NCBI GenBank assembly: GCA_965655095.1
Contig: OZ296652.1
Coordinates: 96,658,001-96,722,000, forward strand
DNA: 64,000 nucleotides
Direction: 5' to 3'
Origin: Haplodiscus bocki
Lineage: Eukaryota
Shown: piece by piece, positions 742-53,299 of the stretch
How positions within the stretch are numbered: the stretch's first letter is position 1
Layout of the letters: each line of letters opens with the position of its first letter
Notes under the pieces: generated by a model
Told to the model about the DNA's origin: nothing
Seen by the model: the letters and a program-made list of their open reading frames with translations, nothing else
Database searches by the model: none
Position numbers and translations under genes: made by a program

Positions 742-3700
742 AAATTTGAGGAACAGAAGGGAGATGGTGGTGGCGAAAATTGAGGAATTCAAAAAAAAAG
801 GAGAGGCTCTAGTCCGTTAAGCGGGAAAACACGAGTTGTGTTGATATCGTGGCGTAAATGGTTTTCAACAATAACACCATACTGCCTTTTCATGTTACCA
901 ATGACGGAGCGGCACGCACCAAGCATGGTGATAAAAACTGGAGCCAGTAGAGAAATGACAGTCCGTGGAAAACTATAATTTACCATAAAGTTGGAATTGT
1001 TGAATCCCAATTATCAGTTTGTATCACCAGCTTTTTTTATATCCATCTTGCCCCTTGTGCTGTTCCCGTCATCACTTGAGAAACTAGTTAATATTTTATG
1101 TTTAGCCTTACTCGTAATGCGACAACAGTAGATCCCACCAAACAGAATCCTGGCAGTTAACGTTTGTACCCGAAATGCTGTGATGGCACCCACTCACAGG
1201 CACTACCCGCACCGCACCACCATCTTATAAAAACCCAATAGCTCATTTATTGAACATTTTGACACTTTCCTTCATCTACTTGATCGCAAGTTTTCAGAAG
1301 TTGAAAGAACATTTCCGCTAGAAGTGGAATGGAATCGGATACAAGTTCCTGCTTACAATATTACTCACGGAAACTAGTAACTAATCACCATTGAAAACGC
1401 AGATTTTTAAAAAACCATGAACGGACTCTGGAAGTTATAGCGAGTTTAGAATATTAGTTTCATTGTAACAAGATGGCTGCTACGAAACTATACTCAAAAG
1501 ATTTGAGATCGGTTCTGTCTGTGTACCGATGAACAAAATCTTCTGCGAAACTGACAGCTGGTTCAAACGACGTCAATTTTTGCGGATGATAGCTTTCCGG
1601 AGTCGCTTGAGACTACTTAATACCCAATATACCAATGATGCTTATGGGAAGTCGAACAACTCAAACACCAACACCTAGACCAGTAAAATTCTCAGCAAGG
1701 ACCGATAGTGCTGCATCCGCTCCAGAAAAAATCATTGACGAAGACGCTTGCGAGCCTGCAGAATATTGGAAAACCATTTTTGCTCACAACTTCTGGAGGA
1801 AATTTGATTTTTTAGTTTATTGGAGCTTTTTGGAAACAGATAAAAGTCCTTCAGGAACAATTGCTGCTCAGCACACCAAATGATATTTGCACACATAAGC
1901 ATCAAGAAATGATAACATCCAACAACGTCGGCAAGTGCACAGAAATAAACCTCTACTCTCCAACCAGGCAACCAATACTAAGAGAAACAATGAAGTAATA
2001 CCTAGTACGTTGACACACTCAACAGGACCGAAAAATGTGTAACATATTAGCGAACTGTCACTAATAGTGTTAAAGTAACAATAAAGGTACACTATTAGAT
2101 TGAACTAGTCTATATTCTTTTTAACTGGGCTTTTCCTTCCAGTAATGCTTGCTCCTCGAGATCAATTTTTCACCTTAGCCAGTGAACCCTTTGTTAAACC
2201 TCATGGTGAGATCTCAAAATTCTATCCCTATACCACATGTAGAAACTGGAACAGACATCGATGGACAGATTTACATGAGGATACTCTTTCAGGTTCCCAC
2301 AACCGAGAAACCACCTGTCCTTCTGCTCCTTCGTGTTCAACTCACCAGTCTTATGAAAAATAAAAAAATGAGCAACTACGAGTACGCAGGAAGCCAATAC
2401 CATCGACACAAGGTCTGTTTTCAACCGATGTTTTCCAACAAATGTGAAATGTTTTCGAAATTTGAGGAACAGAAAGGACATGGTGGTGGCGAAAATTGAG
2501 GAATTCAAAATAAGGAGAGGCTCTAGTCCGTTAAGCGGGAAAACACGAGTTGTGTTGATATCGTGGCGTAAATGGTTTTCAACAATAACACGATACTGCC
2601 TTTTCATGGTACCAATGAGGGAACGGCACGCACCAAGCATGGTGATAAAAGCTGGAGCCAGTAGGGAAATGGCAGTCCGTGGAAAACTATAATTTCCCAC
2701 AAAATTGGAATTGTTGAATCCCAATTATCAATTATCTATCACCAGCTTTTTTTACATCCATCTTGCCATTTGTGCTGTTGCCGTCATCACTTGAAAAATT
2801 AGTTAATATTTCTATGTTTAGCCTTACTCGTAATGCGACAACAGTAGATCCCACCAAACAGAATCCTGGCAGTTAACGTTTGTACCCGAAATGCTGTAAT
2901 GGCACCCACTCACAGGCACTACCCGCACCGCACCACCATCTTATAAAAACCCAATAGCTCATTTATTGAACATTTTGACACTTTCCTTCATCTACTTGAT
3001 CGCAAGTTTTCAGAAGTTGAAAGAACATTTCCGCTGGAAGTGGAATGGAATCGGATACAAGTTCCTGCTTACAATATTACTCACGGAAACTAGTAACTAA
3101 TCACCATTGAAAACGCAGATTTTTAAAAAACCATGAACGGACTCTGGAAGTTATAGCGAGTTTAGAATATTAGTTTCATTGTAACAAGATGGCTGCTACG
3201 AAACTATACTCAAAAGATTTGAGATCGGTTCTGTCTGTGTACCGATGAACAAAATCTTCTGCGAAACTGACAGCTGGTTCAAACGACGTCAATTTTTGCG
3301 GATGATAGCTTTCCGGAGTCGCTCGAGACTACTTAATACCCAATATACCAATGATGCTTATGGGAAGTCGAACAACTCAAACACCAACACCTAGACCAGT
3401 AAAATTCTCAGCAAGGACCGATAGTGCTGCATCCGCTCCAGAAAAAAATCATTGACGAAGACGCTTGCGAGCCTGCAGAATATTGGAAAACCATTTTTGC
3501 TCACAACTTCTGGAGGAAATTTGATTTTTTAGTTTATTGGAGCTTTTTGGAAACAGATAAAAGTCCTTCAGGAACAATTGCTGCTCAGCACACCAAATGA
3601 TATTTGCACACATAAGCATCAAGAAATGATAACATCCAACAACGTCGGCAAGTGCACAGAAATAAACCTCTACTCTCCAACCAGGCAACCAATACTAAGA

Positions 3701-6700
3701 GAAACAATGAAGTAATACCTAGTACGTTGACACACTCAACAGGACCGAAAAATGTGTAACATATTAGCGAACTGTCACTAATAGTGTTAAAGTAACAATA
3801 AAGGTACACTATTAGATTGAACTAGTCTATATTCTTTTTAACTGGGCTTTTCCTTCCAGTAATGCTTGCTCCTCGAGATCAATTTTTCACCTTAGCCAGT
3901 GAACCCTTTGTTAAACCTCATGGTGAGATCTCAAAATTCTATCCCTATACCACATGTAGAAACTGGAACAGACATCGATGGACAGATTTACATGAGGATA
4001 CTCTTTCAGGTTCCCACAACCGAGAAACCACCTGTCCTTCTGCTCCTTCGTGTTCAACTCACCAGTCTTATGAAAAATAAAAAAATGAGCAACTACGAGT
4101 ACGCAGGAAGCCAATACCATCGACACAAGGTCTGTTTTCAACCGATGTTTTCCAACAAATGTGAAATGTTTTCGAAATTTGAGGAACAGAAAGGACATGG
4201 TGGTGGCGAAAATTGAGGAATTCAAAATAAGGAGAGGCTCTAGTCCGTTAAGCGGGAAAACACGAGTTGTGTTGATATCGTGGCGTAAATGGTTTTCAAC
4301 AATAACACGATACTGCCTTTTCATGGTACCAATGAGGGAACGGCACGCACCAAGCATGGTGATAAAAGCTGGAGCCAGTAGGGAAATGGCAGTCCGTGGA
4401 AAACTATAATTTCCCACAAAATTGGAATTGTTGAATCCCAATTATCAATTATCTATCACCAGCTTTTTTTACATCCATCTTGCCATTTGTGCTGTTGCCG
4501 TCATCACTTGAAAAATTAGTTAATATTTCTATGTTTAGCCTTACTCGTAATGCGACAACAGTAGATCCCACCAAACAGAATCCTGGCAGTTAACGTTTGT
4601 ACCCGAAATGCTGTAATGGCACCCACTCACAGGCACTACCCGCACCGCACCACCATCTTATAAAAACCCAATAGCTCATTTATTGAACATTTTGACACTT
4701 TCCTTCATCTACTTGATCGCAAGTTTTCAGAAGTTGAAAGAACATTTCCGCTGGAAGTGGAATGGAATCGGATACAAGTTCCTGCTTACAATATTACTCA
4801 CGGAAACTAGTAACTAATCACCATTGAAAACGCAGATTTTTAAAAAACCATGAACGGACTCTGGAAGTTATAGCGAGTTTAGAATATTAGTTTCATTGTA
4901 ACAAGATGGCTGCTACGAAACTATACTCAAAAGATTTGAGATCGGTTCTGTCTGTGTACCGATGAACAAAATCTTCTGCGAAACTGACAGCTGGTTCAAA
5001 CGACGTCAATTTTTGCGGATGATAGCTTTCCGGAGTCGCTCGAGACTACTTAATACCCAATATACCAATGATGCTTATGGGAAGTCGAACAACTCAAACA
5101 CCAACACCTAGACCAGTAAAATTCTCAGCAAGGACCGATAGTGCTGCATCCGCTCCAGAAAAAAATCATTGACGAAGACGCTTGCGAGCCTGCAGAATAT
5201 TGGAAAACCATTTTTGCTCACAACTTCTGGAGGAAATTTGATTTTTTAGTTTATTGGAGCTTTTTGGAAACAGATAAAAGTCCTTCAGGAACAATTGCTG
5301 CTCAGCACACCAAATGATATTTGCACACATAAGCATCAAGAAATGATAACATCCAACAACGTCGGCAAGTGCACAGAAATAAACCTCTACTCTCCAACCA
5401 GGCAACCAATACTAAGAGAAACAATGAAGTAATACCTAGTACGTTGACACACTCAACAGGACCGAAAAATGTGTAACATATTAGCGAACTGTCACTAATA
5501 GTGTTAAAGTAACAATAAAGGTACACTATTAGATTGAACTAGTCTATATTCTTTTTAACTGGGCTTTTCCTTCCAGTAATGCTTGCTCCTCGAGATCAAT
5601 TTTTCACCTTAGCCAGTGAACCCTTTGTTAAACCTCATGGTGAGATCTCAAAATTCTATCCCTATACCACATGTAGAAACTGGAACAGACATCGATGGAC
5701 AGATTTACATGAGGATACTCTTTCAGGTTCCCACAACCGAGAAACCACCTGTCCTTCTGCTCCTTCGTGTTCAACTCACCAGTCTTATGAAAAATAAAAA
5801 AATGAGCAACTACGAGTACGCAGGAAGCCAATACCATCGACACAAGGTCTGTTTTCAACCGATGTTTTCCAACAAATGTGAAATGTTTTCGAAATTTGAG
5901 GAACAGAAAGGACATGGTGGTGGCGAAAATTGAGGAATTCAAAATAAGGAGAGGCTCTAGTCCGTTAAGCGGGAAAACACGAGTTGTGTTGATATCGTGG
6001 CGTAAATGGTTTTCAACAATAACACGATACTGCCTTTTCATGGTACCAATGAGGGAACGGCACGCACCAAGCATGGTGATAAAAGCTGGAGCCAGTAGGG
6101 AAATGGCAGTCCGTGGAAAACTATAATTTCCCACAAAATTGGAATTGTTGAATCCCAATTATCAATTATCTATCACCAGCTTTTTTTACATCCATCTTGC
6201 CATTTGTGCTGTTGCCGTCATCACTTGAAAAATTAGTTAATATTTCTATGTTTAGCCTTACTCGTAATGCGACAACAGTAGATCCCACCAAACAGAATCC
6301 TGGCAGTTAACGTTTGTACCCGAAATGCTGTAATGGCACCCACTCACAGGCACTACCCGCACCGCACCACCATCTTATAAAAACCCAATAGCTCATTTAT
6401 TGAACATTTTGACACTTTCCTTCATCTACTTGATCGCAAGTTTTCAGAAGTTGAAAGAACATTTCCGCTAGAAGTGGAATGGAATCGGATACAAGTTCCT
6501 GCTTACAATATTACTCACGGAAACTAGTAACTAATCACCATTGAAAACGCAGATTTTTAAAAAACCATGAACGGACTCTGGAAGTTATAGCGAGTTTAGA
6601 ATATTAGTTTCATTGTAACAAGATGGCTGCTACGAAACTATACTCAAAAGATTTGAGATCGGTTCTGTCTGTGTACCGATGAACAAAATCTTCTGCGAAA

Positions 6701-45294: not shown

Positions 45295-48200
45295 GGAAAA
45301 GGATATGATAAAAAAACAGGATGAACACTAGGTTACTGTGGAATAAAACAAGATGATTTGAGATAAGATTAGATAAGATAAGATAGGCTAAAACAAGTTA
45401 AACAAAGATAACATAAAATACGAAAAGATAAGGTCAGATAAGATAAGATAAAATAACAATTTTTTGAAACAGTTCAATCAAGATAAGATAAAAAAGATAA
45501 GATAAAACGATATAGGAAAAGATAGAATCGGAAAAGTTAAGATATGATAACATTGAAGAAGTAGGAAACTTTAGGATAGGATAAATTAAAATGATATAAG
45601 ATAGGACAGTATGATGAGAGATAAAATAAGATATCATGAGATAAGGCAAGATAAGAGAACGGGAAATAAGATAAGATACAATGAGATGAGATGAACTAAG
45701 ATAACGTTAGATAGGATCAGATAAGATACAATCCGATCAGGAAAGATAAAATGGGATCAGCTAAAATAGGACTAAACAATTTGAACAAACACAGAGTATA
45801 AGAAGAGACAGTAAAAGACAAGCTAAGATAAATAAGAGGAAGTATTCAACGAAAATATAGGACAAAATAAGATAGGAAAAACTCAGATAACGTAAGATAA
45901 AATACGTCAACTTCCGATAAAATAGAAAAAAAAGTAGGATGAGATAAACGAATTAAGATACGACAAGAGCAGATATTATAAGATAAGGCAAGATTAGCTG
46001 AAATAAGAAAAGATGAGATATGCTAAGATAGGAAAAGATGTTATAAGATGAGATGAGATAAAACAGGCCAAAATGAGATACGATAGGATAAATCATTTTA
46101 GGAAAAGGTAAGACAAACTGATATATAATAAGTTGAGATGTGATTAGAGAAGAGATTATAAAAGGTAGCATAAAAAAAACGAAGAAAAGTTAAGTTATGA
46201 TAGGACGAAATGATCTAATAAACGATAAGATGAAGTATTCTAAGATAGGATAAGATAAAATGAAACACTATAAGGGAGGATGGGGCAAGGTTTTTTAGGA
46301 TGAGATAAGACAAGGGAAGATAAGATAGGATTGGATAAAGAAAGATCTTATGGCAAAAACAAGGATAAGGTAGGAAAGGATAAGATACGGTAACATAGGA
46401 TTGGATAAGATAAAGTTCAGACGATAAGATGAAATAGGATGAGATAAGATAAAATAAAGTAAGTTGTGATATGATGAGATTGGATTGGCTGAGAGAGGAT
46501 AAGCTAAGTTAAGTTAACATAGGATGAAATAGAAGGAGAAAAAATAAAAGAAGATGAGCTAAGATAGAATAGATTAAAATAACAAAGTGTAAAATAAAAA
46601 ACAAACGTTTTGATGTGATAAGATGAGATAATACAAAAAAAGTTGACATAAAATACGAGAAACCAATTCACGATAAGCTAGGATAAGTTGAGATTGAAAG
46701 GCGATGAGAAAAAGAATGACACAAATAAGGTAAGATATGGTGCGATATGAAGAGATGAGGTGAGTCGAGATGACAAAACAAAGGTTACGAAAAGAAAAAA
46801 CAAGATGAGAAAAGATTGGATAAGATAAAGTATGATGCGACGAGAAAAGTTAGACATAAAAGATAAGATAGGATAAGATAAGTTGTGAGACAACAAGCTA
46901 AGTGAAGACAGGATAAGATGAAAGAGGATGAGAAAAGATAATTGAAGATAAGCTATGATAAGATAAGTTAGGATAAGGAAAAAATAGGATAAGTTTATTG
47001 GAATATGTTAAGATTGGATCAGAGGTGATATGTTAAGGTAAGCCAAGTTAAGATGACGTAGGATAAAATAGGATGCGAAAAAATCAAAAGGACACCAGAA
47101 GCTTAGTTATGATGTCATAAAAAAAGACAAGATAAAATGAGAGAAGAAAAATTTAGATATGGCTTGTTCAGACAAGATGTTTTTGGAAAAAATGTTACAC
47201 AATAAGGTGAAATCTGCTAAACTAAGATAAAATAAGATAAGATAAGATAAGATGAGATGAGATAAGTTAAAAAAACTTTTCGGAAAAAATGAGAATTTAA
47301 TATAGGCTAAGATAAGTTGAAATAATACAGGAGAAGAAAGAGAAACTGTAAGGTAGATGAGTCTAAACATTAAACCATAAAATAAGAAGAGATGAGGAGG
47401 ATAAGTTTATATGAGACAAACTTTTTTAGGAAAAGATAAAACCGGGACAGTTAGAATATGATAACGTAAAATGATTCGACAATCGATGAGACACGAAAAG
47501 CGGAGACAGCTTGAAATAAGATGAAAAAAGATACGATAAAAAATATGAGATAGGACAAAGAAAGCTACGATAAGAAAAGACACGACTAGGACTCAGACAC
47601 AATGATAAGATTAAGTAACGAAAATTGAGAGATGGTGAGTTGATGCAAGATAAAAGGAGACTACACAAGATGAAAATTGATTTCAAAAATAGGCTAAGGT
47701 GAGAAAAGAAAACATAGCATGACATAACGTAGTATGATAGAAGACGACACTTATTTTGCAAAAATAAGATAAAACAAGTTGAGATGACGTTTTTTTGGAT
47801 GAGATAAGATAGGATAGGTTGGAACACGACAGAAAAAAGTATGAGAGAAGAAAAAAGCTAAGCTACGAACAATTAGGTCGACATGAAACGAGAGAAAAAA
47901 AAGTAACAAAAAAGTGTATGACAGGGTAAGTTAAGGTAAGATAGGAAAAGTTTTTTGTAAGAGAAAAGGAGGTAAGATATTTCCCGAAATGATAAGTGAA
48001 GACTAATCGAAAAGAAATAGGGAAAAGTAACTTAGGACAGGATAACATAGGATAAAATGAGCTGTTTTAGCAGAAGCTAAGATGAAGTTGTAAAAGATAA
48101 AACAAGAAATGATAAGATAGGATACGATATGTTAAAACGAAATAGGATAAGAAAAACTAAGATTAGATGAGATACGAGTAGTAATGAGAAGCTGTGATAG

Positions 48201-48505
48201 GATGAACTCTGAGATGGTCGCACAAGATAAGATGAGATAAGATAAGAAAAGACAAGAAAGATAAAAGAAGGTAATTTAAGATGAGATAAGATAAGAATGG
48301 ATATTAAAAAAAAATAGGGTAAGATAGGACTGGTAAGAATCTAGAAGGAAAACTATAAAGTCGGTTGCGCTAAAATGAAATCAGGTGAGAGAAGTTGAGA
48401 GATGATAACATAAAAAATTTAAACTACGATAACCTAAGATAAAGTAACAGAGGATAATATAATGTTAGAGAAGATGAGGTGAGACAAAATAAGACAAGAC
48501 CAGAT
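45295..48505 (+). repeat. Degenerate (GATAA)n satellite, duplicate copy (resumes at 52781-52850 after the Gypsy element)
   Basis: Matches 36010-39135 variant for variant. cagataagatcgaataagataag resumes directly after the 3' LTR. Confidence 0.95.
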
Positions 48506-48675
48506 TGTGGTGATTTCATATTTTATTAAACTCTGCTCCTATAGCCTTTTCACCACTTTATTATGTTACCTTTATTACATACTTCATAACCTGCTTTGTT
48601 TCAGTTGCTTGAAATGATGTACAATACAAACTCGATCTACTGTCTGTTTTGCTCAGTTTAAGTTAGGTCACGACA
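48506..48675 (+). repeat. 5' LTR (170 bp)
   Basis: TGTGGTGA...TCACGACA imperfect terminal inverted repeat. Contains Inr-like TCAGTT (48601-48606) and poly(A)-signal variant AATACA (48623-48628). Confidence 0.98.
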
Positions 48676-48677
48676 AT

Positions 48678-48689
48678 TTTCAAGCAACT
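48678..48689 (+). promoter_or_regulatory. Self-complementary primer-binding site (TTTCAAGCAACT)
   Basis: Starts 2 nt after the 5' LTR, lacks the TGG of tRNA-type PBSs, and is the exact reverse complement of LTR 48603-48614 (AGTTGCTTGAAA). Confidence 0.8.
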
Positions 48690-48849
48690 ATACATTTTGC
48701 TGTTGCTTGTCCAAGGAATCTTCCTGCACTGTTGACAAAGCGTTTTCCTCATTCAAAGGATAATGTATTGCCTGACGGACTTTATAAGGTATATTGCTCG
48801 AACGCGGTTATAAAAAAGATACATATTTGGGTGGCACAACTGAATCACT

Positions 48850-51800
48850 ATGGCAGACCCTGCCCCTTCCGCCAAATTCAATTTACATGCTCCAGTATTC
48901 GATGGCGGCGATGCTGAAAGCTTTAATCTATGGTTGTCTCAGTTTCAGAGATATATAAGCGTTACAAAGCCAGCCGAAGACGACAAACTCGATCTGTTTC
49001 TTCTCTGTGCTGGTAATAAGGCTGCTCAGTATTACAATGAAGTAACTTGGCCAGAACTTACCCAAGCCGAAAAAGATGCTGGTGTAACAGAGTTTTCACG
49101 TGCTGTTACCTTCATCACCAACAAATTTGTGTCTGGCAAAAATATTCTGTCTGAAAGAATAAAATTGTATTCGGCCAAACAACGACCGAACCAATCGCTA
49201 ACGGATTTTTTATCTGAACTGCGTCAGATTGCTAGTTATTGCAATTTCCCTACTGCCTTTGCTGACGAAGCTTTGCGTGATGCATTTTGCCAGGGACTTG
49301 CGTCTGATGGCTTGAAAAGGGCTGTATGCCGTGCTTTTGCTACTGCGACAGCTAACAACGTCGCATTTACACTAACAAATGCAGTCAGTGCCGCAGAAGT
49401 TGAAGAATCTGCTTTACAAAGTTCTAGCCAGGCTGAGACATCTATATCCGTTGCAGCACAAAAGGTAAACTCACGAAAGAATCGTGGAAACACTGGAAAT
49501 GAATCCAGCAGGACTAACAATCCCTGACACAAAAATGGTAAAACCGTCCGTTGTCACTGGTGTGGATCTGCTGATTTACACGGTAAAAAAGAATGTCCCG
49601 CCAAAGACAAAATTTGCACTAAATGTGGCCGTACTGGACACTTTGCTAAGGTTTGTCTATCAAAGTCCAAGGTATCTGCAAATAAAGTCGACTCTGACAG
49701 TGATTTTGATTTTGTGGCGGGCGCTTATGGCTCTAAATATAGCGTACGCCAATTTACAGACGTCAGAATTAACGGACGCAACCAAAGCTTCCTTATTGAC
49801 TCTGGTAGTGACATCACGGTAATCACTGAGAAGGTCGCACATCACTTAAATTTACACTACACGCGGATACAAGCCACTGCTAAATGTATTTCTTCCAATA
49901 AAATATCCCTGAAGGGTATTACAGACGTTACACTTTCTTTTTCGGGCGTGAAACTAAAGGAAACTGTTCATATTGCCGAACAACTGTGCGATCCTGCTAT
50001 AATGGGCACAAACGTTTTTTCAAAATTCAAATCAGTTACGATCAATTACGGCGGTAGCAATCCTAAAATTACAATTGCGTGTCAGAAAGTTGCCACTGAC
50101 AATTTACATTTTGGTTTTATTGACGTAGAACCTTTTGCTATTATTGTCTTGGAGCCAAACGCTACGCCAATTCGATGCCCATCAAGAATCAGATCCAGAG
50201 AGGATAATGAATTTATTCGCAAAGAAGTTACCAAATTGCTTAAACAAGGAATTATCGAACCCTCCAGCTCGCCCTGGCGTTCTCAAGTTGTTGTTGCTAA
50301 AAATAAGGATAAGAAACGAATGTGTATCGATTTTGCTTCCACAGTCAACAGATATACAGTTCCGGATGCGTATCCTATTCCAGTTATTGAAAATTTGCTC
50401 CAGAAAGTCAGTAAATGGAAATTTTACTCCTATATTGACCTCCAGTCTGCGTATCATCAGCTCCGTCTGAAAGATGACGAGAAACACCTCACTGCCTTCG
50501 AAGCTAACGGTCGTTTATACCAGTTTCGCAGATTACCATTTGGTGTGACCAATGGTGTTGCTGCATTTCAAAGAGCTATTGATATGTTGATTGAAGACTT
50601 GGAAGGCGTTGCTGCCAATATCGACGACGTCGTGGTCGGCGGCGAAACTCAAAAGGAGCATGATGAAGCTCTAGATAAATTTATGAGAGTCGCCGAGAAA
50701 CGTGGATTGATAATCAACCGAAAAAAAGCAAATTCAATACAACTGAATTGCATTTTTTAGGCCACGTCTTTAAATCAGGTAAAATGTACCCTGAAAAGGA
50801 ACGTATGGCACCATTGCTTGATTATCCTATTCCGAAGGCCAAAAAGGAATTGGATCGATTCGTTGGCCTAGCTGTATACTACTCAAAATGGATACCCTCC
50901 TTTGCTGCGGTAACAGAACCCTTATTCGCAGCTAAATTAAAGCCTACCTTTCCTCTAAATGCTAAAGCTTGTGAATCAATTAGAAATATCAAACAATTGG
51001 TGTCTGAATCAGCTCTATGGATTCCCGACCGCCATAAACCGTTTCGGTTAGAAACTGATGCTTCTGGCACTGCTATTGGTGGTGTTTTGTCGCAAGACGA
51101 CCGCCCTGTCGCTTTTGTTTCTCACAAATTGAGTGAACAAGAAATAAACTGGCCAGCAGTTGAGAAAGAAGCTTTTGCCATTGTTTGGTGCATTGACAGG
51201 CTCAAACACTTTTTAGTTGGTTCAAATTTTACGATTATAACGGACCAGAAAGGTGTTGCATACCTCCTTGATGGCAGACCGAAATCAGCTATCAAAAATA
51301 ATAAGTTATCACGATGGCGCCTTTCTCTTGCAGAATACAAATTCGACGTGCAATATCGTCCTGGAAGTCAAAATTCCGTTGCCGACGCGATGAGCAGAAT
51401 TGCCAACTTGTCTACCGACGATTTAGATAAACCATATATCTGTACAGAAATTGACACTGTTCTGGAACAAGCACACGACAAAATGGGACACCCCGGAATT
51501 GCACGCACGTGTGAATATTTACAGCGTCACTGTTACATTCCAAAGCTCAAAGACAAAGTAACGAAATATATTTCAAATTGTCGGATTTGTCTCGCGTTGA
51601 AACCAAAATTTTATTCCCCTCCGAAAGTGCCTTTGATAACATCAAAGACTCCATGGGAAAGATTATCGATAGATTTTGTAGGCCCCAAGCCTACAACAAG
51701 ATCTGGTTATACTTGTTTCCTAACTGTTGTTGACGAATTCAGCAGATTCCCTTTTGCTATTCCTATGAAAGATGCCAAAACATGCAACGTTATCACTGCG

Positions 51801-52634
51801 TTAACCAATATTTTTACGTTATTTGGCCCTCCTTTATCTATTCACAGTGATCGAGGTGCTCAGTTTGAAAGCCACGAGTTTAACCTGTTTCTTGGTCGCT
51901 GGAACGTGAGAAAGTCACGCACCACTCCGTACAACCCCGCTGGTAACGGACAATGCGAGCGAACCAATGGAACAATTTGGAGAACTGTAAAACTCCGACT
52001 GAAACAGCTGAACAAGAGCTTAGATCAATGGGATGAAGAATTGAATATGGCTCTAATCAATATCCGTACGTTAGCATGTCGTACAATTAATAATGAAAGC
52101 CCTCATAATCGCTTGTTTGCCTTTACGAGACGAACAGCTCTCAAAAACGGCGATTTACAAGATCATTATCTTGCTGACGTACCTGAATGGATGAGCCCTG
52201 CCTCGCCTGTTTACGTTAAGAACTTTGTCCGCAATCGTAAAGACGACCCACTGGTCAACAAAGCTCGGATAGTGAAAGTAATTAGCCCACAACATGCCCT
52301 GGTTTCATACCCTCAAACAAATCGGGTTGATACGGTTGCTACAAAATATATCGCCAAATCGGTGGACCAGCCAGTAACGAGTCAGGAACCTCAGGCGGAT
52401 GTCCCTTTAAACGATGAATACGACGAGGGTACATCGGAATTACCTCTCGTTGATCCAGGCCATATATCTGATACCAATACGGTCGAACATGACCAGCATG
52501 CTGCTTCACCGCCGTCCTTTGTACACGAAACAACTGACTCCAAACAATCGGCGACCGCTGGTTGCGCACTACGAAGAAGCACCCGCAGAAGAACTCAAAA
52601 ACGGGGAGAATGTGGTGATTTCATATTTTATTAA
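48850..52634 (+). pseudogene. Gypsy gag-pol polyprotein (single ancestral ORF; one in-frame stop and one frameshift in this copy)
   Basis: Gag starts at 48850; TGA at 49525-49527 is followed in frame by two Zn knuckles (CHWC-x5-H-x4-C; CTKC-x4-H-x4-C). Protease LIDSGS; RT LPFG...NIDD; -1 nt in the A-run at 50721-50727; RNase H TDAS/EKEA/TDQ; integrase HHCC + IDF/SDRG/CERTN. Confidence 0.95.
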
Positions 52635-52780
52635 ACTCTGCTCTTATAGCCTTTTCACCACTTTATTATGTTACATTTATTACATACTTCATAACCTGCT
52701 TTGTTTCAGTTGCTTGAAATGATGTACAATACAAACTCGATCTACTGTCTGTTTTGCTCAGTTTAAGTTAGGTCACGACA
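52611..52780 (+). repeat. 3' LTR (170 bp)
   Basis: 168/170 identical to the 5' LTR; preceded by a polypurine tract. Confidence 0.98.
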
Positions 52781-53299
52781 CAGATAAGATCGAATAAGAT
52801 AAGATCAGCTGAGATGAGCTAAAATGGGACATGATGAAACAAAATTGAACAATCAGGACTTTTTTCAATTGTGGTAAAATTTAAGAATCGTTAGTGCCAA
52901 CAGGTGTGCTCGGCGCCAGAAAAGCAGCTTCCTCCAGGCGTGCGCCCTTTAGATTTCACAGCCCAGCGGGCAAGAAAAGATGCTCGGATAACACTATCAG
53001 AACTCCTACGTGAAAAGTGTTCCTGGTCTTTCGAAACTTTTTGCCGAGTCATCAGTCTCTCGGAAAATATACAAACTTGTTAACTTCGAATGTGTTTTTA
53101 TCCTCCAGATCATAGAATAATCCCTTGCTCATTAACATTTTAGCACAGGCCACCTTGGCCAAACAACTTAAGGTTAGGTGTGTCTCGTGCCTTTCTTGTC
53201 TTTCTAATAAGACGCAGTGTAACGAGTTTTGTTATCTCGTTACTTTTGAGTTCTTCAGAATACATTGACCTAGAGTTTCCAAAAATTCAGGCAACAATG

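What the first reader, a model, noticed from the sequence alone, without database searches (positions are those of the whole stretch)
48506..48710. tRNA-independent, self-priming Gypsy retrotransposon: PBS is complementary to the element's own predicted mRNA 5' end
Seen: the 12 nt at the PBS position (48678-48689, TTTCAAGCAACT, 2 nt after the LTR) have no TGG, so they cannot pair with a tRNA CCA end. They are perfectly complementary to LTR 48603-48614. The pairing stops exactly at the A of an initiator-like TCA(+1)GTT, with an AT-rich element ~30 nt upstream. Known: S. pombe Tf1 primes by folding its first 11 nt onto the PBS and cleaving them with RNase H, and this has been proposed for Tf1/sushi-type chromoviruses. 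Inference: this compact element (170-bp LTRs, double Zn-knuckle Gag, no chromodomain, animal-type host) uses the same mechanism in a non-chromovirus lineage. Self-primer Gypsy families may already be catalogued in animals, so lineage-level novelty needs checking.
Basis: partly seen in the sequence, partly recalled or inferred. Interest (0 to 1): 0.8.

Follow-up and report, generated by a model that had tools for sequence, protein, structure and literature searches.

The report
Self-priming Gypsy retrotransposon clade in animals
A small jumping gene in this animal genome, and about twenty related families in sea anemone, snail, mussel and stingray DNA, carry no tRNA primer site; the site instead pairs with a stretch of the element's own terminal repeat, so they most likely start copying themselves with a piece of their own RNA, as the yeast element Tf1 does.

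Summary
Window 48506-52780 is a 4275-bp Ty3/Gypsy element with 170-bp LTRs, a CAGAT target duplication and a polypurine tract. The 12 nt at the primer-binding position (48678-48689) are the exact reverse complement of LTR 48603-48614. No interior window of the element matches the LTR this well. An empty-site allele in public reads shows the insertion is recent.

Relatives give the decisive evidence. Every analysable relative (about 20 families, 31-61% Pol identity) has a different sequence at the primer-binding position, and each pairs with its own LTR. These include Nematostella, Biomphalaria, Mytilus and Hypanus. None has a TGG-type tRNA site. Close copies show compensatory double changes.

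Tf1-like self-priming is therefore well supported, though not shown biochemically.

- The start of the RNA at 48603 is untested. In the relative with the clearest promoter, the primer lies about 45 nt inside the RNA.
- "Non-chromovirus" rests only on the absence of a chromodomain. No reference phylogeny could be run.

One new point: in most families the primer ends in the poly(A) signal hexamer. The window copy itself is defective.

The parts
48501..48505 (+). target-site duplication CAGAT (left copy)
   Evidence: Same 5 nt at 52781-52785. An empty-site contig joins 48500 to 52781 with 5 shared letters.
48506..48675 (+). 5' LTR (170 bp, TGTGG...CGACA)
   Evidence: Direct repeat with 52611-52780, 2 mismatches.
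48571..48579 (+). AT-rich TATA-like element TTTATTACA, -32 to -24 from 48603
   Evidence: Sequence. Function is inferred only.
48601..48606 (+). initiator-like TCAGTT (A at 48603)
   Evidence: Sequence. Not conserved at the primer start in most relatives.
48603..48614 (+). predicted self-primer AGTTGCTTGAAA inside the LTR
   Evidence: Exact complement of 48678-48689. Invariant in 29 of 30 copies. Equivalent segments are found in about 20 related families.
48623..48628 (+). candidate poly(A) signal variant AATACA, 9 nt after the primer
   Evidence: Motif scan. In 13-14 of 18 relatives the canonical hexamer forms the last 6 nt of the primer.
48676..48677 (+). 2-nt spacer AT between LTR and PBS
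   Evidence: Sequence. Relatives have 1-2 nt spacers.
48678..48689 (+). primer-binding site TTTCAAGCAACT (self-complementary type, no TGG)
48702..48709 (+). second copy of the primer core GTTGCTTG, able to pair locally with the PBS
   Evidence: Sequence. Present in all copies; not seen in relatives.
48850..49527 (+). gag (capsid part), ended in this copy by an in-frame stop at 49525-49527
   Evidence: ORF list and Pfam Retrotrans_gag, weak. 27 other copies read a sense codon at that place.
49528..50760 (+). same frame continues: nucleocapsid knuckles, aspartic protease, RT up to the catalytic motif
   Evidence: Translation; Pfam gag-asp_proteas and RVT_1; zf-CCHC.
50748..52634 (+). RT thumb, RNase H and integrase (H2C2 plus rve core), in another frame because of a frameshift near 50720-50760; no chromodomain
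   Evidence: Pfam. Best solved relative is Ty3. Family contigs differ from this copy at the frameshift.
52597..52610 (+). polypurine tract AAAAACGGGGAGAA
   Evidence: Lies directly upstream of the 3' LTR.
52611..52780 (+). 3' LTR
52781..52785 (+). target-site duplication CAGAT (right copy)

Best explanation
The element is a compact Ty3/Gypsy LTR retrotransposon (gag, protease, RT, RNase H, integrase; no chromodomain). It most likely starts minus-strand DNA synthesis without a tRNA. In the genomic RNA, a 12-nt stretch of the LTR (48603-48614) folds back onto the site 2 nt downstream of the 5' LTR (48678-48689), closing the R-U5 region into a panhandle. By analogy with Tf1, the element's RNase H is inferred to cut the RNA at the 3' end of the paired stretch. 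The resulting 3'-OH is then extended through the spacer and U5. Plus-strand strong-stop synthesis later copies the RNA primer back into DNA, so the PBS is rewritten from the primer in each cycle. This explains the perfect pairing and the compensatory changes. The arrangement is not peculiar to this family: it is shared by a large, animal-wide group of compact chromodomain-less Gypsy elements. In most of them the 3' end of the primer is the poly(A) signal hexamer, so the same duplex would also hide the 5' copy of that signal. Shown here: the complementarity, its position, its covariation across families, the absence of a tRNA-type PBS, and the recent mobility of the family. Inferred: the cleavage, the priming itself, the transcription start (48603 is plausible for this family but unproven) and the masking of the poly(A) signal.
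For: - Exact 12-nt complement at the canonical PBS position. 0 of 3855 interior windows match the LTR as well.
- The same architecture, each time with a different sequence, is seen in every analysable relative. These are L031-33, L081, L083, L085 (Nematostella), L086, L087 (Biomphalaria), L088 (Mytilus), L089 (Hypanus) and about 12 metagenome families. Duplexes are 11-17 nt and start 1-2 nt after the LTR's CA. Own-interior controls gave 0 hits in about 3600-4400 windows each.
- Duplex positions 4-13 each show 3-4 different Watson-Crick pair types across families.
- Compensatory double changes occur between close copies: L094 against L102/L154 (97% identical) and L096 against L104.
- No TGG within the PBS in ours or in 7 of the first 8 families.
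- Outside the element the 12-mer occurs at chance frequency in the genome (217 against 212 for the reversed control). None of 47 sampled sites, including all 17 with a T-loop-like motif within 30 nt, is a tRNA gene.
- The MFE and centroid folds contain the primer:PBS stem in ours and in 7 relatives.
- The family is young and mobile: at least 40 copies at 95-100% identity, and an empty-site allele at this locus.
- The Tf1 mechanism is taken from PMC7175516; Tj1 from PMC4600332.
Against: - No RNA data exist for the host, so the transcription start, the poly(A) site and any cleaved primer are unobserved.
- The folding energy of the leader is not exceptional (z = -1.26).
- An initiator at the primer start is not conserved. 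In Hypanus the predicted start lies about 45 nt upstream, so the 'first nucleotides of the mRNA' feature of Tf1 may not hold.
- Host tRNAs were excluded only by pattern and sampling, not against a full tRNA set. Mitochondrial tRNAs and other small RNAs were not examined.
- One family (L084) has only a 9-nt match (p = 0.02).
- The duplex overlaps the poly(A) signal in most families, so part of its conservation could serve RNA processing rather than priming.
Confidence: 0.75

Rival explanations
1. The LTR:PBS duplex is only an RNA-structure device. It would hide the 5' copy of the poly(A) signal, or serve packaging or a switch between translation and reverse transcription. The true primer would then be some other, unidentified RNA.
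For: In 13-14 of 18 families the last 6 nt of the paired LTR segment are AATAAA, ATTAAA or AGTAAA. In several compact relatives the gag ATG abuts the paired site. In Hypanus the segment is internal to the predicted RNA.
Against: The paired site always begins 1-2 nt after the LTR end, which is where a primer's 3'-OH must sit to regenerate U5. No other PBS candidate lies next to U5 in any family. In this window's family the paired segment does not contain a canonical poly(A) hexamer. Compensatory double changes between 97%-identical copies are easier to explain if the primer is copied into the PBS than by two independent selected mutations. The two functions do not exclude each other.
Confidence: 0.12
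2. Priming by a host tRNA fragment or another host small RNA that happens to share the 12-mer, as a copia-type internal or half-tRNA primer would.
For: The CTTGAAA part of the primer resembles an anticodon loop of a tRNA-Ser(UGA) type (own reasoning). A complete host tRNA set, mitochondrial included, was not available.
Against: The genome-wide frequency of the 12-mer outside the element equals the reversed control. No tRNA gene was found at 47 sampled sites, including all 17 with a nearby T-loop-like motif. None of the 40 hits with the motif 30-60 nt away looks like a tRNA. A host primer would not explain why about 20 families each carry a different PBS that matches its own LTR.
Confidence: 0.03
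3. Chance complementarity with no function.
For: The sequences are AT-rich, and the leader's folding energy is unremarkable.
Against: Analytic expectation is about 1e-5. There were no equal matches in the interior controls of ten elements. The feature recurs in every related family, with covariation.
Confidence: 0.01

Closest known systems
Tf1/Tf2 of Schizosaccharomyces pombe and Tj1 of S. japonicus (self-primed Ty3/Gypsy elements)
   Same: No tRNA PBS. [quoted passage not shown] The family-level gag-pol reading frame appears to be single. In Tf1 the first 11 nt pair with the PBS and RNase H cuts between nt 11 and 12 (PMC7175516). Tj1 was assigned to the mechanism on the same kind of sequence evidence (PMC4600332).
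   Different: Here there is no chromodomain, the hosts are animals, the LTRs are much shorter and the elements are about 4-4.7 kb. The primer is adjacent to or overlaps the poly(A) signal. It is not shown to be the RNA's first nucleotides, and in Hypanus it probably is not. No biochemical evidence exists.
Vertebrate Tf1/sushi chromoviruses, Tcn1-like chromoviruses and plant TAR (copia) elements, all predicted self-primers
   Same: Self-priming is predicted from LTR/PBS complementarity across whole lineages (PMC6317226; PMC4600332 citing Butler et al. 2001).
   Different: Those Gypsy lineages are chromoviruses. In this group no chromodomain was found in the element or the four relatives scanned at E<=10, nor in the precomputed Pfam lists of the 120 nearest homologues. 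The LTR end motifs also differ from the published Sushi motifs (PMC3601003, Table 3). Kinship to Tf1/sushi by RT phylogeny was not tested.
Mag-lineage / C-clade animal Gypsy elements such as Steamer and mosquito Mag-like families
   Same: Compact size of 4.5-5 kb, LTRs of about 150-220 bp, a single gag-pol ORF and a wide distribution in invertebrates and fishes. Atlas neighbours of this Pol are labelled 'K02A2.6-like', a label that PMC8905726 links to the C-clade.
   Different: Steamer and its relatives have a 12-nt tRNA-Leu PBS (TGGTGTCAGAAG) directly after the LTR (PMC8905726). Mosquito Mag-like families use tRNA-Leu or tRNA-Ser (PMC3286476). None of the elements analysed here has such a site. 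Membership was not tested by phylogeny.
Retroviral 5' poly(A)-signal occlusion by RNA structure (HIV-1 poly(A) hairpin; from my own knowledge, not checked here)
   Same: A poly(A) hexamer present in both LTR-derived ends of the RNA would be base-paired only at the 5' end, because only there does a partner sequence follow.
   Different: Here the partner is the PBS itself, so priming and masking would share one duplex. This is inferred, not shown.

Membership tests
Ty3/Gypsy (Metaviridae) LTR retrotransposon | LTRs with TG..CA ends, 4-6-bp target duplication, and a PPT before the 3' LTR | tested here: met
   An empty-site allele confirms the limits.
Ty3/Gypsy (Metaviridae) LTR retrotransposon | Domain order protease, RT, RNase H, integrase, with closest solved relatives in Ty3 | tested here: met
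   Pfam. Ty3 is the best PDB match for both Pol pieces.
Self-primed (Tf1-type) retroelements | No PBS complementary to a tRNA 3' end | tested here: met
   No TGG in 48676-48695. No tRNA gene at the sampled 12-mer sites. The full host tRNA set was not examined.
Self-primed (Tf1-type) retroelements | The PBS is complementary to a sequence of the element's own 5' LTR | tested here: met
   12/12 nt, with the controls. About 20 related families show the same.
Self-primed (Tf1-type) retroelements | The complementary stretch is the very 5' end of the mRNA | not testable with these tools
   No RNA runs exist for the host. The TATA-like and Inr spacing fits 48603 in this family, L033 and L083, but not in Hypanus and others.
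Self-primed (Tf1-type) retroelements | RNase H cleavage of the RNA duplex creates the primer, and the primer sequence is inherited by the PBS | tested here: inconclusive
   Cleavage is not testable here. Inheritance is consistent with the compensatory changes between 97%-identical copies and between L096 and L104.
Tf1/sushi chromovirus lineage | Chromodomain at the integrase C-terminus | tested here: not met
   No Chromo hit at E<=10 in the last 228 residues or in four relatives. None appears in the precomputed Pfam lists of the 120 homologues.
Tf1/sushi chromovirus lineage | RT/RH/IN phylogeny places the element with Tf1, sushi-ichi and their relatives | not testable with these tools
   No named reference sequences could be obtained. 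Indirect evidence only: named neighbours are labelled '17.6' or 'K02A2.6-like', not 'Tf2'.
Mag lineage (A/B/C clades) | Phylogenetic placement with Mag, SURL, Jule and Steamer | not tested
   Only the size, the single ORF and the 'K02A2.6-like' label point this way (PMC8905726).
Mag lineage (A/B/C clades) | tRNA-Leu or tRNA-Ser PBS, as reported for Steamer and mosquito Mag-like elements | tested here: not met
   No such PBS in any analysed element. The Steamer PBS word occurs in L117-L122 but not next to an LTR.

The most novel reading that the evidence does not exclude
A phylum-spanning clade of compact, chromodomain-less animal Gypsy elements (cnidarian, gastropod, bivalve, elasmobranch and this host) has given up tRNA priming altogether. 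It uses a self-primer whose 3' end is the poly(A) signal. One duplex with the PBS would then both prime reverse transcription and silence the 5' poly(A) site. This would be either an independent invention of Tf1-type priming or evidence that self-priming is older and far more widespread in Metaviridae than the Tf1/sushi group. Such elements would be invisible to tRNA-based PBS annotation and immune to 3'-tRF-type silencing.
Probability: 0.35. Interest if true: 0.7.

Novelty: new variant of a known kind. Interest (0 to 1): 0.6.

Why it matters
tRNA priming is treated as a hallmark of LTR retroelements. Annotation pipelines such as LTRdigest-style PBS calls, and the PBS step used in PMC13524379, look only for tRNA 3' ends. 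Self-priming is documented experimentally only for Tf1. In the literature I could search, it is predicted for chromoviruses of fungi, vertebrates and mosses and for one plant copia lineage.

If a large animal-wide Gypsy clade is self-primed, three things follow:
- Many 'PBS-less' animal elements are explained.
- Host defences that target the tRNA PBS (3'-tRFs) would not see these elements.
- The overlap of primer and poly(A) signal gives a testable link between RNA 3'-end processing and the start of reverse transcription.

The mechanism itself is not new, so this extends a known principle rather than founding a new one.

Tried and rejected
- RNA evidence: the look-up of sequencing runs found no RNA run for the host. 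The four runs laid are genomic contigs and cannot show a start or an end of an RNA.
- tRNA search: ARAGORN found no tRNA in the window or at 47 genomic 12-mer sites. After no more DNA could be taken from the host genome, so a full tRNA catalogue and the pol region of other copies could not be examined.
- Thermodynamics: the folding z-score of the leader is only -1.26, so energy alone is no argument.
- Clade naming: PDB and Atlas searches only confirm Ty3/Gypsy. LTR end motifs compared with PMC3601003 Table 3 gave mixed signals: the 5' TGTGGTG fits the CsRn1 motif, the 3' end fits none, and the Gag has CCHC knuckles rather than the CsRn1 type (own knowledge). I therefore did not file the element under any named clade.
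- Steamer PBS: the word TGGTGTCAGA occurs in L117-L122, but not beside an LTR and without LTR repeats, so it is not a tRNA-primed control.
- Apparent exceptions: L135 looked like an exception until the element was seen to lie on the other strand. L098, L104-L106 and L101 needed boundary corrections because the repeats touch contig ends or run into a following PBS.
- Readthrough idea: I considered that the gag stop might be a programmed readthrough site as in Tj1 (PMC4600332). I rejected this because the stop is private to this copy.
- Papers: the original Tf1 papers, Butler et al. 2001 and the SURL and Jule papers are not held.

Full report
**What is in the window**

The region 48506-52780 is a complete LTR retrotransposon of 4275 bp.
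- The two LTRs (48506-48675 and 52611-52780) are 170 bp long, differ at 2 positions, and begin TGTGG and end CGACA.
- They are flanked by a 5-bp target duplication, CAGAT (48501-05 and 52781-85).
- A polypurine tract, AAAAACGGGGAGAA, lies directly before the 3' LTR.
- Between the LTRs lie gag (weak Retrotrans_gag hit), a nucleocapsid with two knuckles, an aspartic protease, RT, RNase H and an integrase with H2C2 and rve domains. One knuckle is canonical CCHC and the other is CX2CX5HX4C.
- The best solved relatives of both Pol pieces are Ty3 proteins.
- No chromodomain is detectable even at E<=10.

This particular copy is broken. It has an in-frame stop in gag at 49525-27 and a frameshift in RT near 50720-50760. 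Twenty-seven other copies have a sense codon at the gag position. The multi-copy contigs of public runs differ from this copy at both places. Both defects are therefore private to this copy.

**The observation**

The 12 nt at 48678-48689, two bases after the LTR, are TTTCAAGCAACT. They are the exact reverse complement of 48603-48614 inside the LTR. The pairing ends sharply on both sides.

The expectation for such a match at a fixed place against a 170-nt LTR is about 1e-5. None of 3855 20-nt windows from the element's own interior matches the LTR by more than 10 nt. There is no TGG, so the 3' CCA end of a tRNA cannot pair here.

**The family in this genome**

The host genome is 1.5 Gb. It holds at least 40 places with the LTR plus leader at 95-100% identity, out of 104 candidates. 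In 28 of 30 sampled copies both 12-mers are unchanged. One copy has a single change in the primer. This uniformity reflects shared descent and is not covariation.

Genomic contigs of three public runs join 48500 directly to 52781, with 5 shared letters, at the depth of the unique flanks. This is the empty site. The insertion is therefore polymorphic, and the family has been mobile recently.

**Excluding a tRNA**

- Outside the element's own contexts, the 12-mer occurs 217 times in the genome, against 212 for the reversed control.
- Seventeen occurrences are followed within 30 nt by a T-loop-like GTTCRA. None of these, nor 30 other sampled sites, is a tRNA gene by ARAGORN.
- Of the 40 occurrences with the motif 30-60 nt away, most belong to an unrelated repeat and none looks like a tRNA.

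The exclusion is incomplete. After no further host DNA could be fetched, so a full tRNA set, including mitochondrial tRNAs, was not screened.

**The decisive evidence: relatives**

A protein search with the RNase H-integrase ORF gave 413 homologues. The 120 best are 36-61% identical, and none has a chromodomain in its precomputed Pfam list. I fetched DNA around 12 of them and around 80 further matches in JGI metagenome contigs.

Wherever LTRs could be delimited, the site 1-2 nt after the LTR's CA is complementary to a segment inside that element's own LTR. The sequence differs from family to family.

| Locus | Source | LTR segment that pairs with the PBS |
|---|---|---|
| Window | this host | AGTTGCTTGAAA |
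| L031/L033 | ENA sample | GTTCGTGCCAGTAA |
| L081 | ENA sample | TTTGTGTAAAA |
| L083 | ENA sample | AGATAATGAATAAAA |
| L085 | Nematostella vectensis | TATGTTGAGTAAA |
| L087 | Biomphalaria glabrata | TAATTTTGTCGAATAAA |
| L088 | Mytilus edulis | GATTTAAGTTGATAAA |
| L089 | Hypanus sabinus | CTTCCAGTCAATAAAA |
| L102 | metagenome set | CAAGTTGATTAAA |
| L096 | metagenome set | TTTAGCTAGTTAAA |
| L100 | metagenome set | TAAGCTGTTAAAA |

Others are listed.

- For ten elements, the own-interior control gave 0 equal matches in about 3600-4400 windows.
- Only L084 is weak (9 nt, p = 0.02).
- No analysable element had a TGG-type PBS.
- An apparent exception, L135, lies on the other strand and conforms.
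- On a FastTree of the 120 homologues, these families fall in all three major parts: the 19-row clade that holds the window element, a separate 8-row clade, and the 91-row remainder. The trait therefore spans the whole sampled neighbourhood.

**Covariation**

When the duplexes are aligned from the primer's 3' end, positions 4-13 each show three or four different Watson-Crick pair types across 20 representatives. On average 11.2 of 12 positions are paired within a family, against 6.5 when the primer of one family is set against the PBS of another.

Two pairs of close relatives show compensatory double changes.
- L094 differs from L102/L154 (97% identical over the region) by G to T in the primer and C to A in the PBS.
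- L096 and L104 differ by C to T in the primer and G to A in the PBS.

Under self-priming this is expected without any second mutation. The RNA primer is copied into the plus-strand strong stop and so rewrites the PBS. This step follows from the general scheme of reverse transcription and was not tested here.

**How it most likely works**

The Tf1 mechanism, as summarised in PMC7175516, is this: the first 11 nt of the RNA pair with the PBS, and RNase H cuts between nt 11 and 12 to make the primer. Tj1 was assigned to the same mechanism on the same kind of sequence evidence as used here (PMC4600332).

For the window element, the MFE and centroid folds of 48603-48712 both contain the 12-bp stem closing R-U5. 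The same holds for seven relatives. I therefore take Tf1-like self-priming as the best explanation, with confidence about 0.75.

The pairing, its position and its covariation are shown. The cleavage and the priming itself are inferred.

(a) The claim that the primer is the first 12 nt of the mRNA is untested, because no RNA run exists for the host.
- A TATA-like element at about -30 from the primer start is seen in this family, in L033 (TATATAA at -30) and in L083 (-29). These cases make 48603 a reasonable guess.
- Most relatives have neither a TATA box nor an initiator at that place.
- The Hypanus LTR has the clearest core promoter: TATAAA at 72 and TCA(+1)GTC with its A at 106. It puts the primer at about +45 to +60.
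- Self-priming does not require the primer to be at the extreme 5' end. After the cut, the upstream part is copied only from the 3' LTR, as U3 is.

(b) In 13-14 of 18 families the last six nucleotides of the primer are AATAAA, ATTAAA or AGTAAA, usually followed by GCC.
- In the window family the primer ends in TTGAAA, and a variant AATACA follows 9 nt later.
- The duplex would therefore sequester the 5' poly(A) signal while leaving the 3' copy free.
- This second function is my inference. It is also the basis of the main rival reading, in which the duplex is structure only and the primer is something else.
- I rate that rival at about 0.12, because the paired site always sits exactly where a primer must end and because no other PBS candidate exists.

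(c) 'Non-chromovirus' is supported by the absence of a chromodomain and by neighbours being labelled '17.6' or 'K02A2.6-like' rather than 'Tf2'.
- PMC8905726 links the K02A2.6-like label to the Mag C-clade.
- Steamer, a C-clade element, has a tRNA-Leu PBS, and mosquito Mag-like elements use tRNA-Leu or tRNA-Ser (PMC3286476).
- Without named reference sequences I could not place the clade. I leave it unnamed.

**Novelty**

In the library I could search, self-priming is described or predicted for these groups:
- Tf1, Tf2 and Tj1, and fungal relatives (PMC6934838, PMC4600332, PMC7175516);
- the vertebrate Tf1/sushi group (cited in PMC4600332 and PMC6317226);
- Tcn1-like chromoviruses and plant TAR copia elements (PMC6317226).

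No paper combined self-priming with cnidarian, mollusc or echinoderm elements. A recent metazoan survey looked only for tRNA PBSs (PMC13524379).

Key older papers (Lin and Levin 1997; Butler et al. 2001; the SURL and Jule papers) were not available, so prior description cannot be ruled out. I rate the finding a new variant of a known kind. The mechanism is known. What appears new is a chromodomain-less, animal-wide lineage and the primer's overlap with the poly(A) signal.

**Verdict**

The self-priming interpretation is well supported by comparative evidence. The transcription start and the lineage claim remain open. Interest 0.6.

Noticed in passing
window 48500/52781 (empty site): Genomic contigs of three public runs join the two flanks directly, with 5 shared letters, at single-copy depth. 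This insertion is therefore absent from the individual sequenced in those runs and is polymorphic.
   Followed up: partly
window 48702-48709: The primer core GTTGCTTG recurs 12 nt downstream of the PBS in all copies. It could form a local 8-bp hairpin with the PBS that competes with the long-range duplex. It was not seen in relatives. Its function, if any, is unknown.
   Followed up: partly
host genome, e.g. G000:C1:22583904-22583956, C9:1168802-1168854: A second dispersed repeat with about 25 listed copies carries the same 12-mer, followed by AGTTTATTATTAATTGCACTGTGAG... It is not tRNA-like. It could be another LTR family or a non-autonomous derivative that shares the primer. The DNA could not be fetched.
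   Followed up: no
window 45343-48500 and 52786-52860: The element sits inside a long degenerate (GATAA/GATAAGAT)n-like array that continues on both sides of the insertion.
   Followed up: no
L100:4153-4174, L094:4144-4162, L155:2752-2772: In the most compact relatives the gag ATG lies at or within the 3' end of the paired PBS. The duplex could therefore also govern access to the start codon.
   Followed up: no
L081:1-7490: This metagenome contig is a 4186-bp unit repeated head to tail at 100% identity (internal region plus one LTR). It may be an assembly collapse of a multi-copy element, a tandem pair sharing an LTR, or a 1-LTR circle.
   Followed up: no
L088:6684-8752: The Mytilus edulis relative has identical LTRs and TSD TCTAT. 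It carries an internal duplication of about 666 bp that lengthens it to 6.1 kb.
   Followed up: no
I did not examine it.
   Followed up: no
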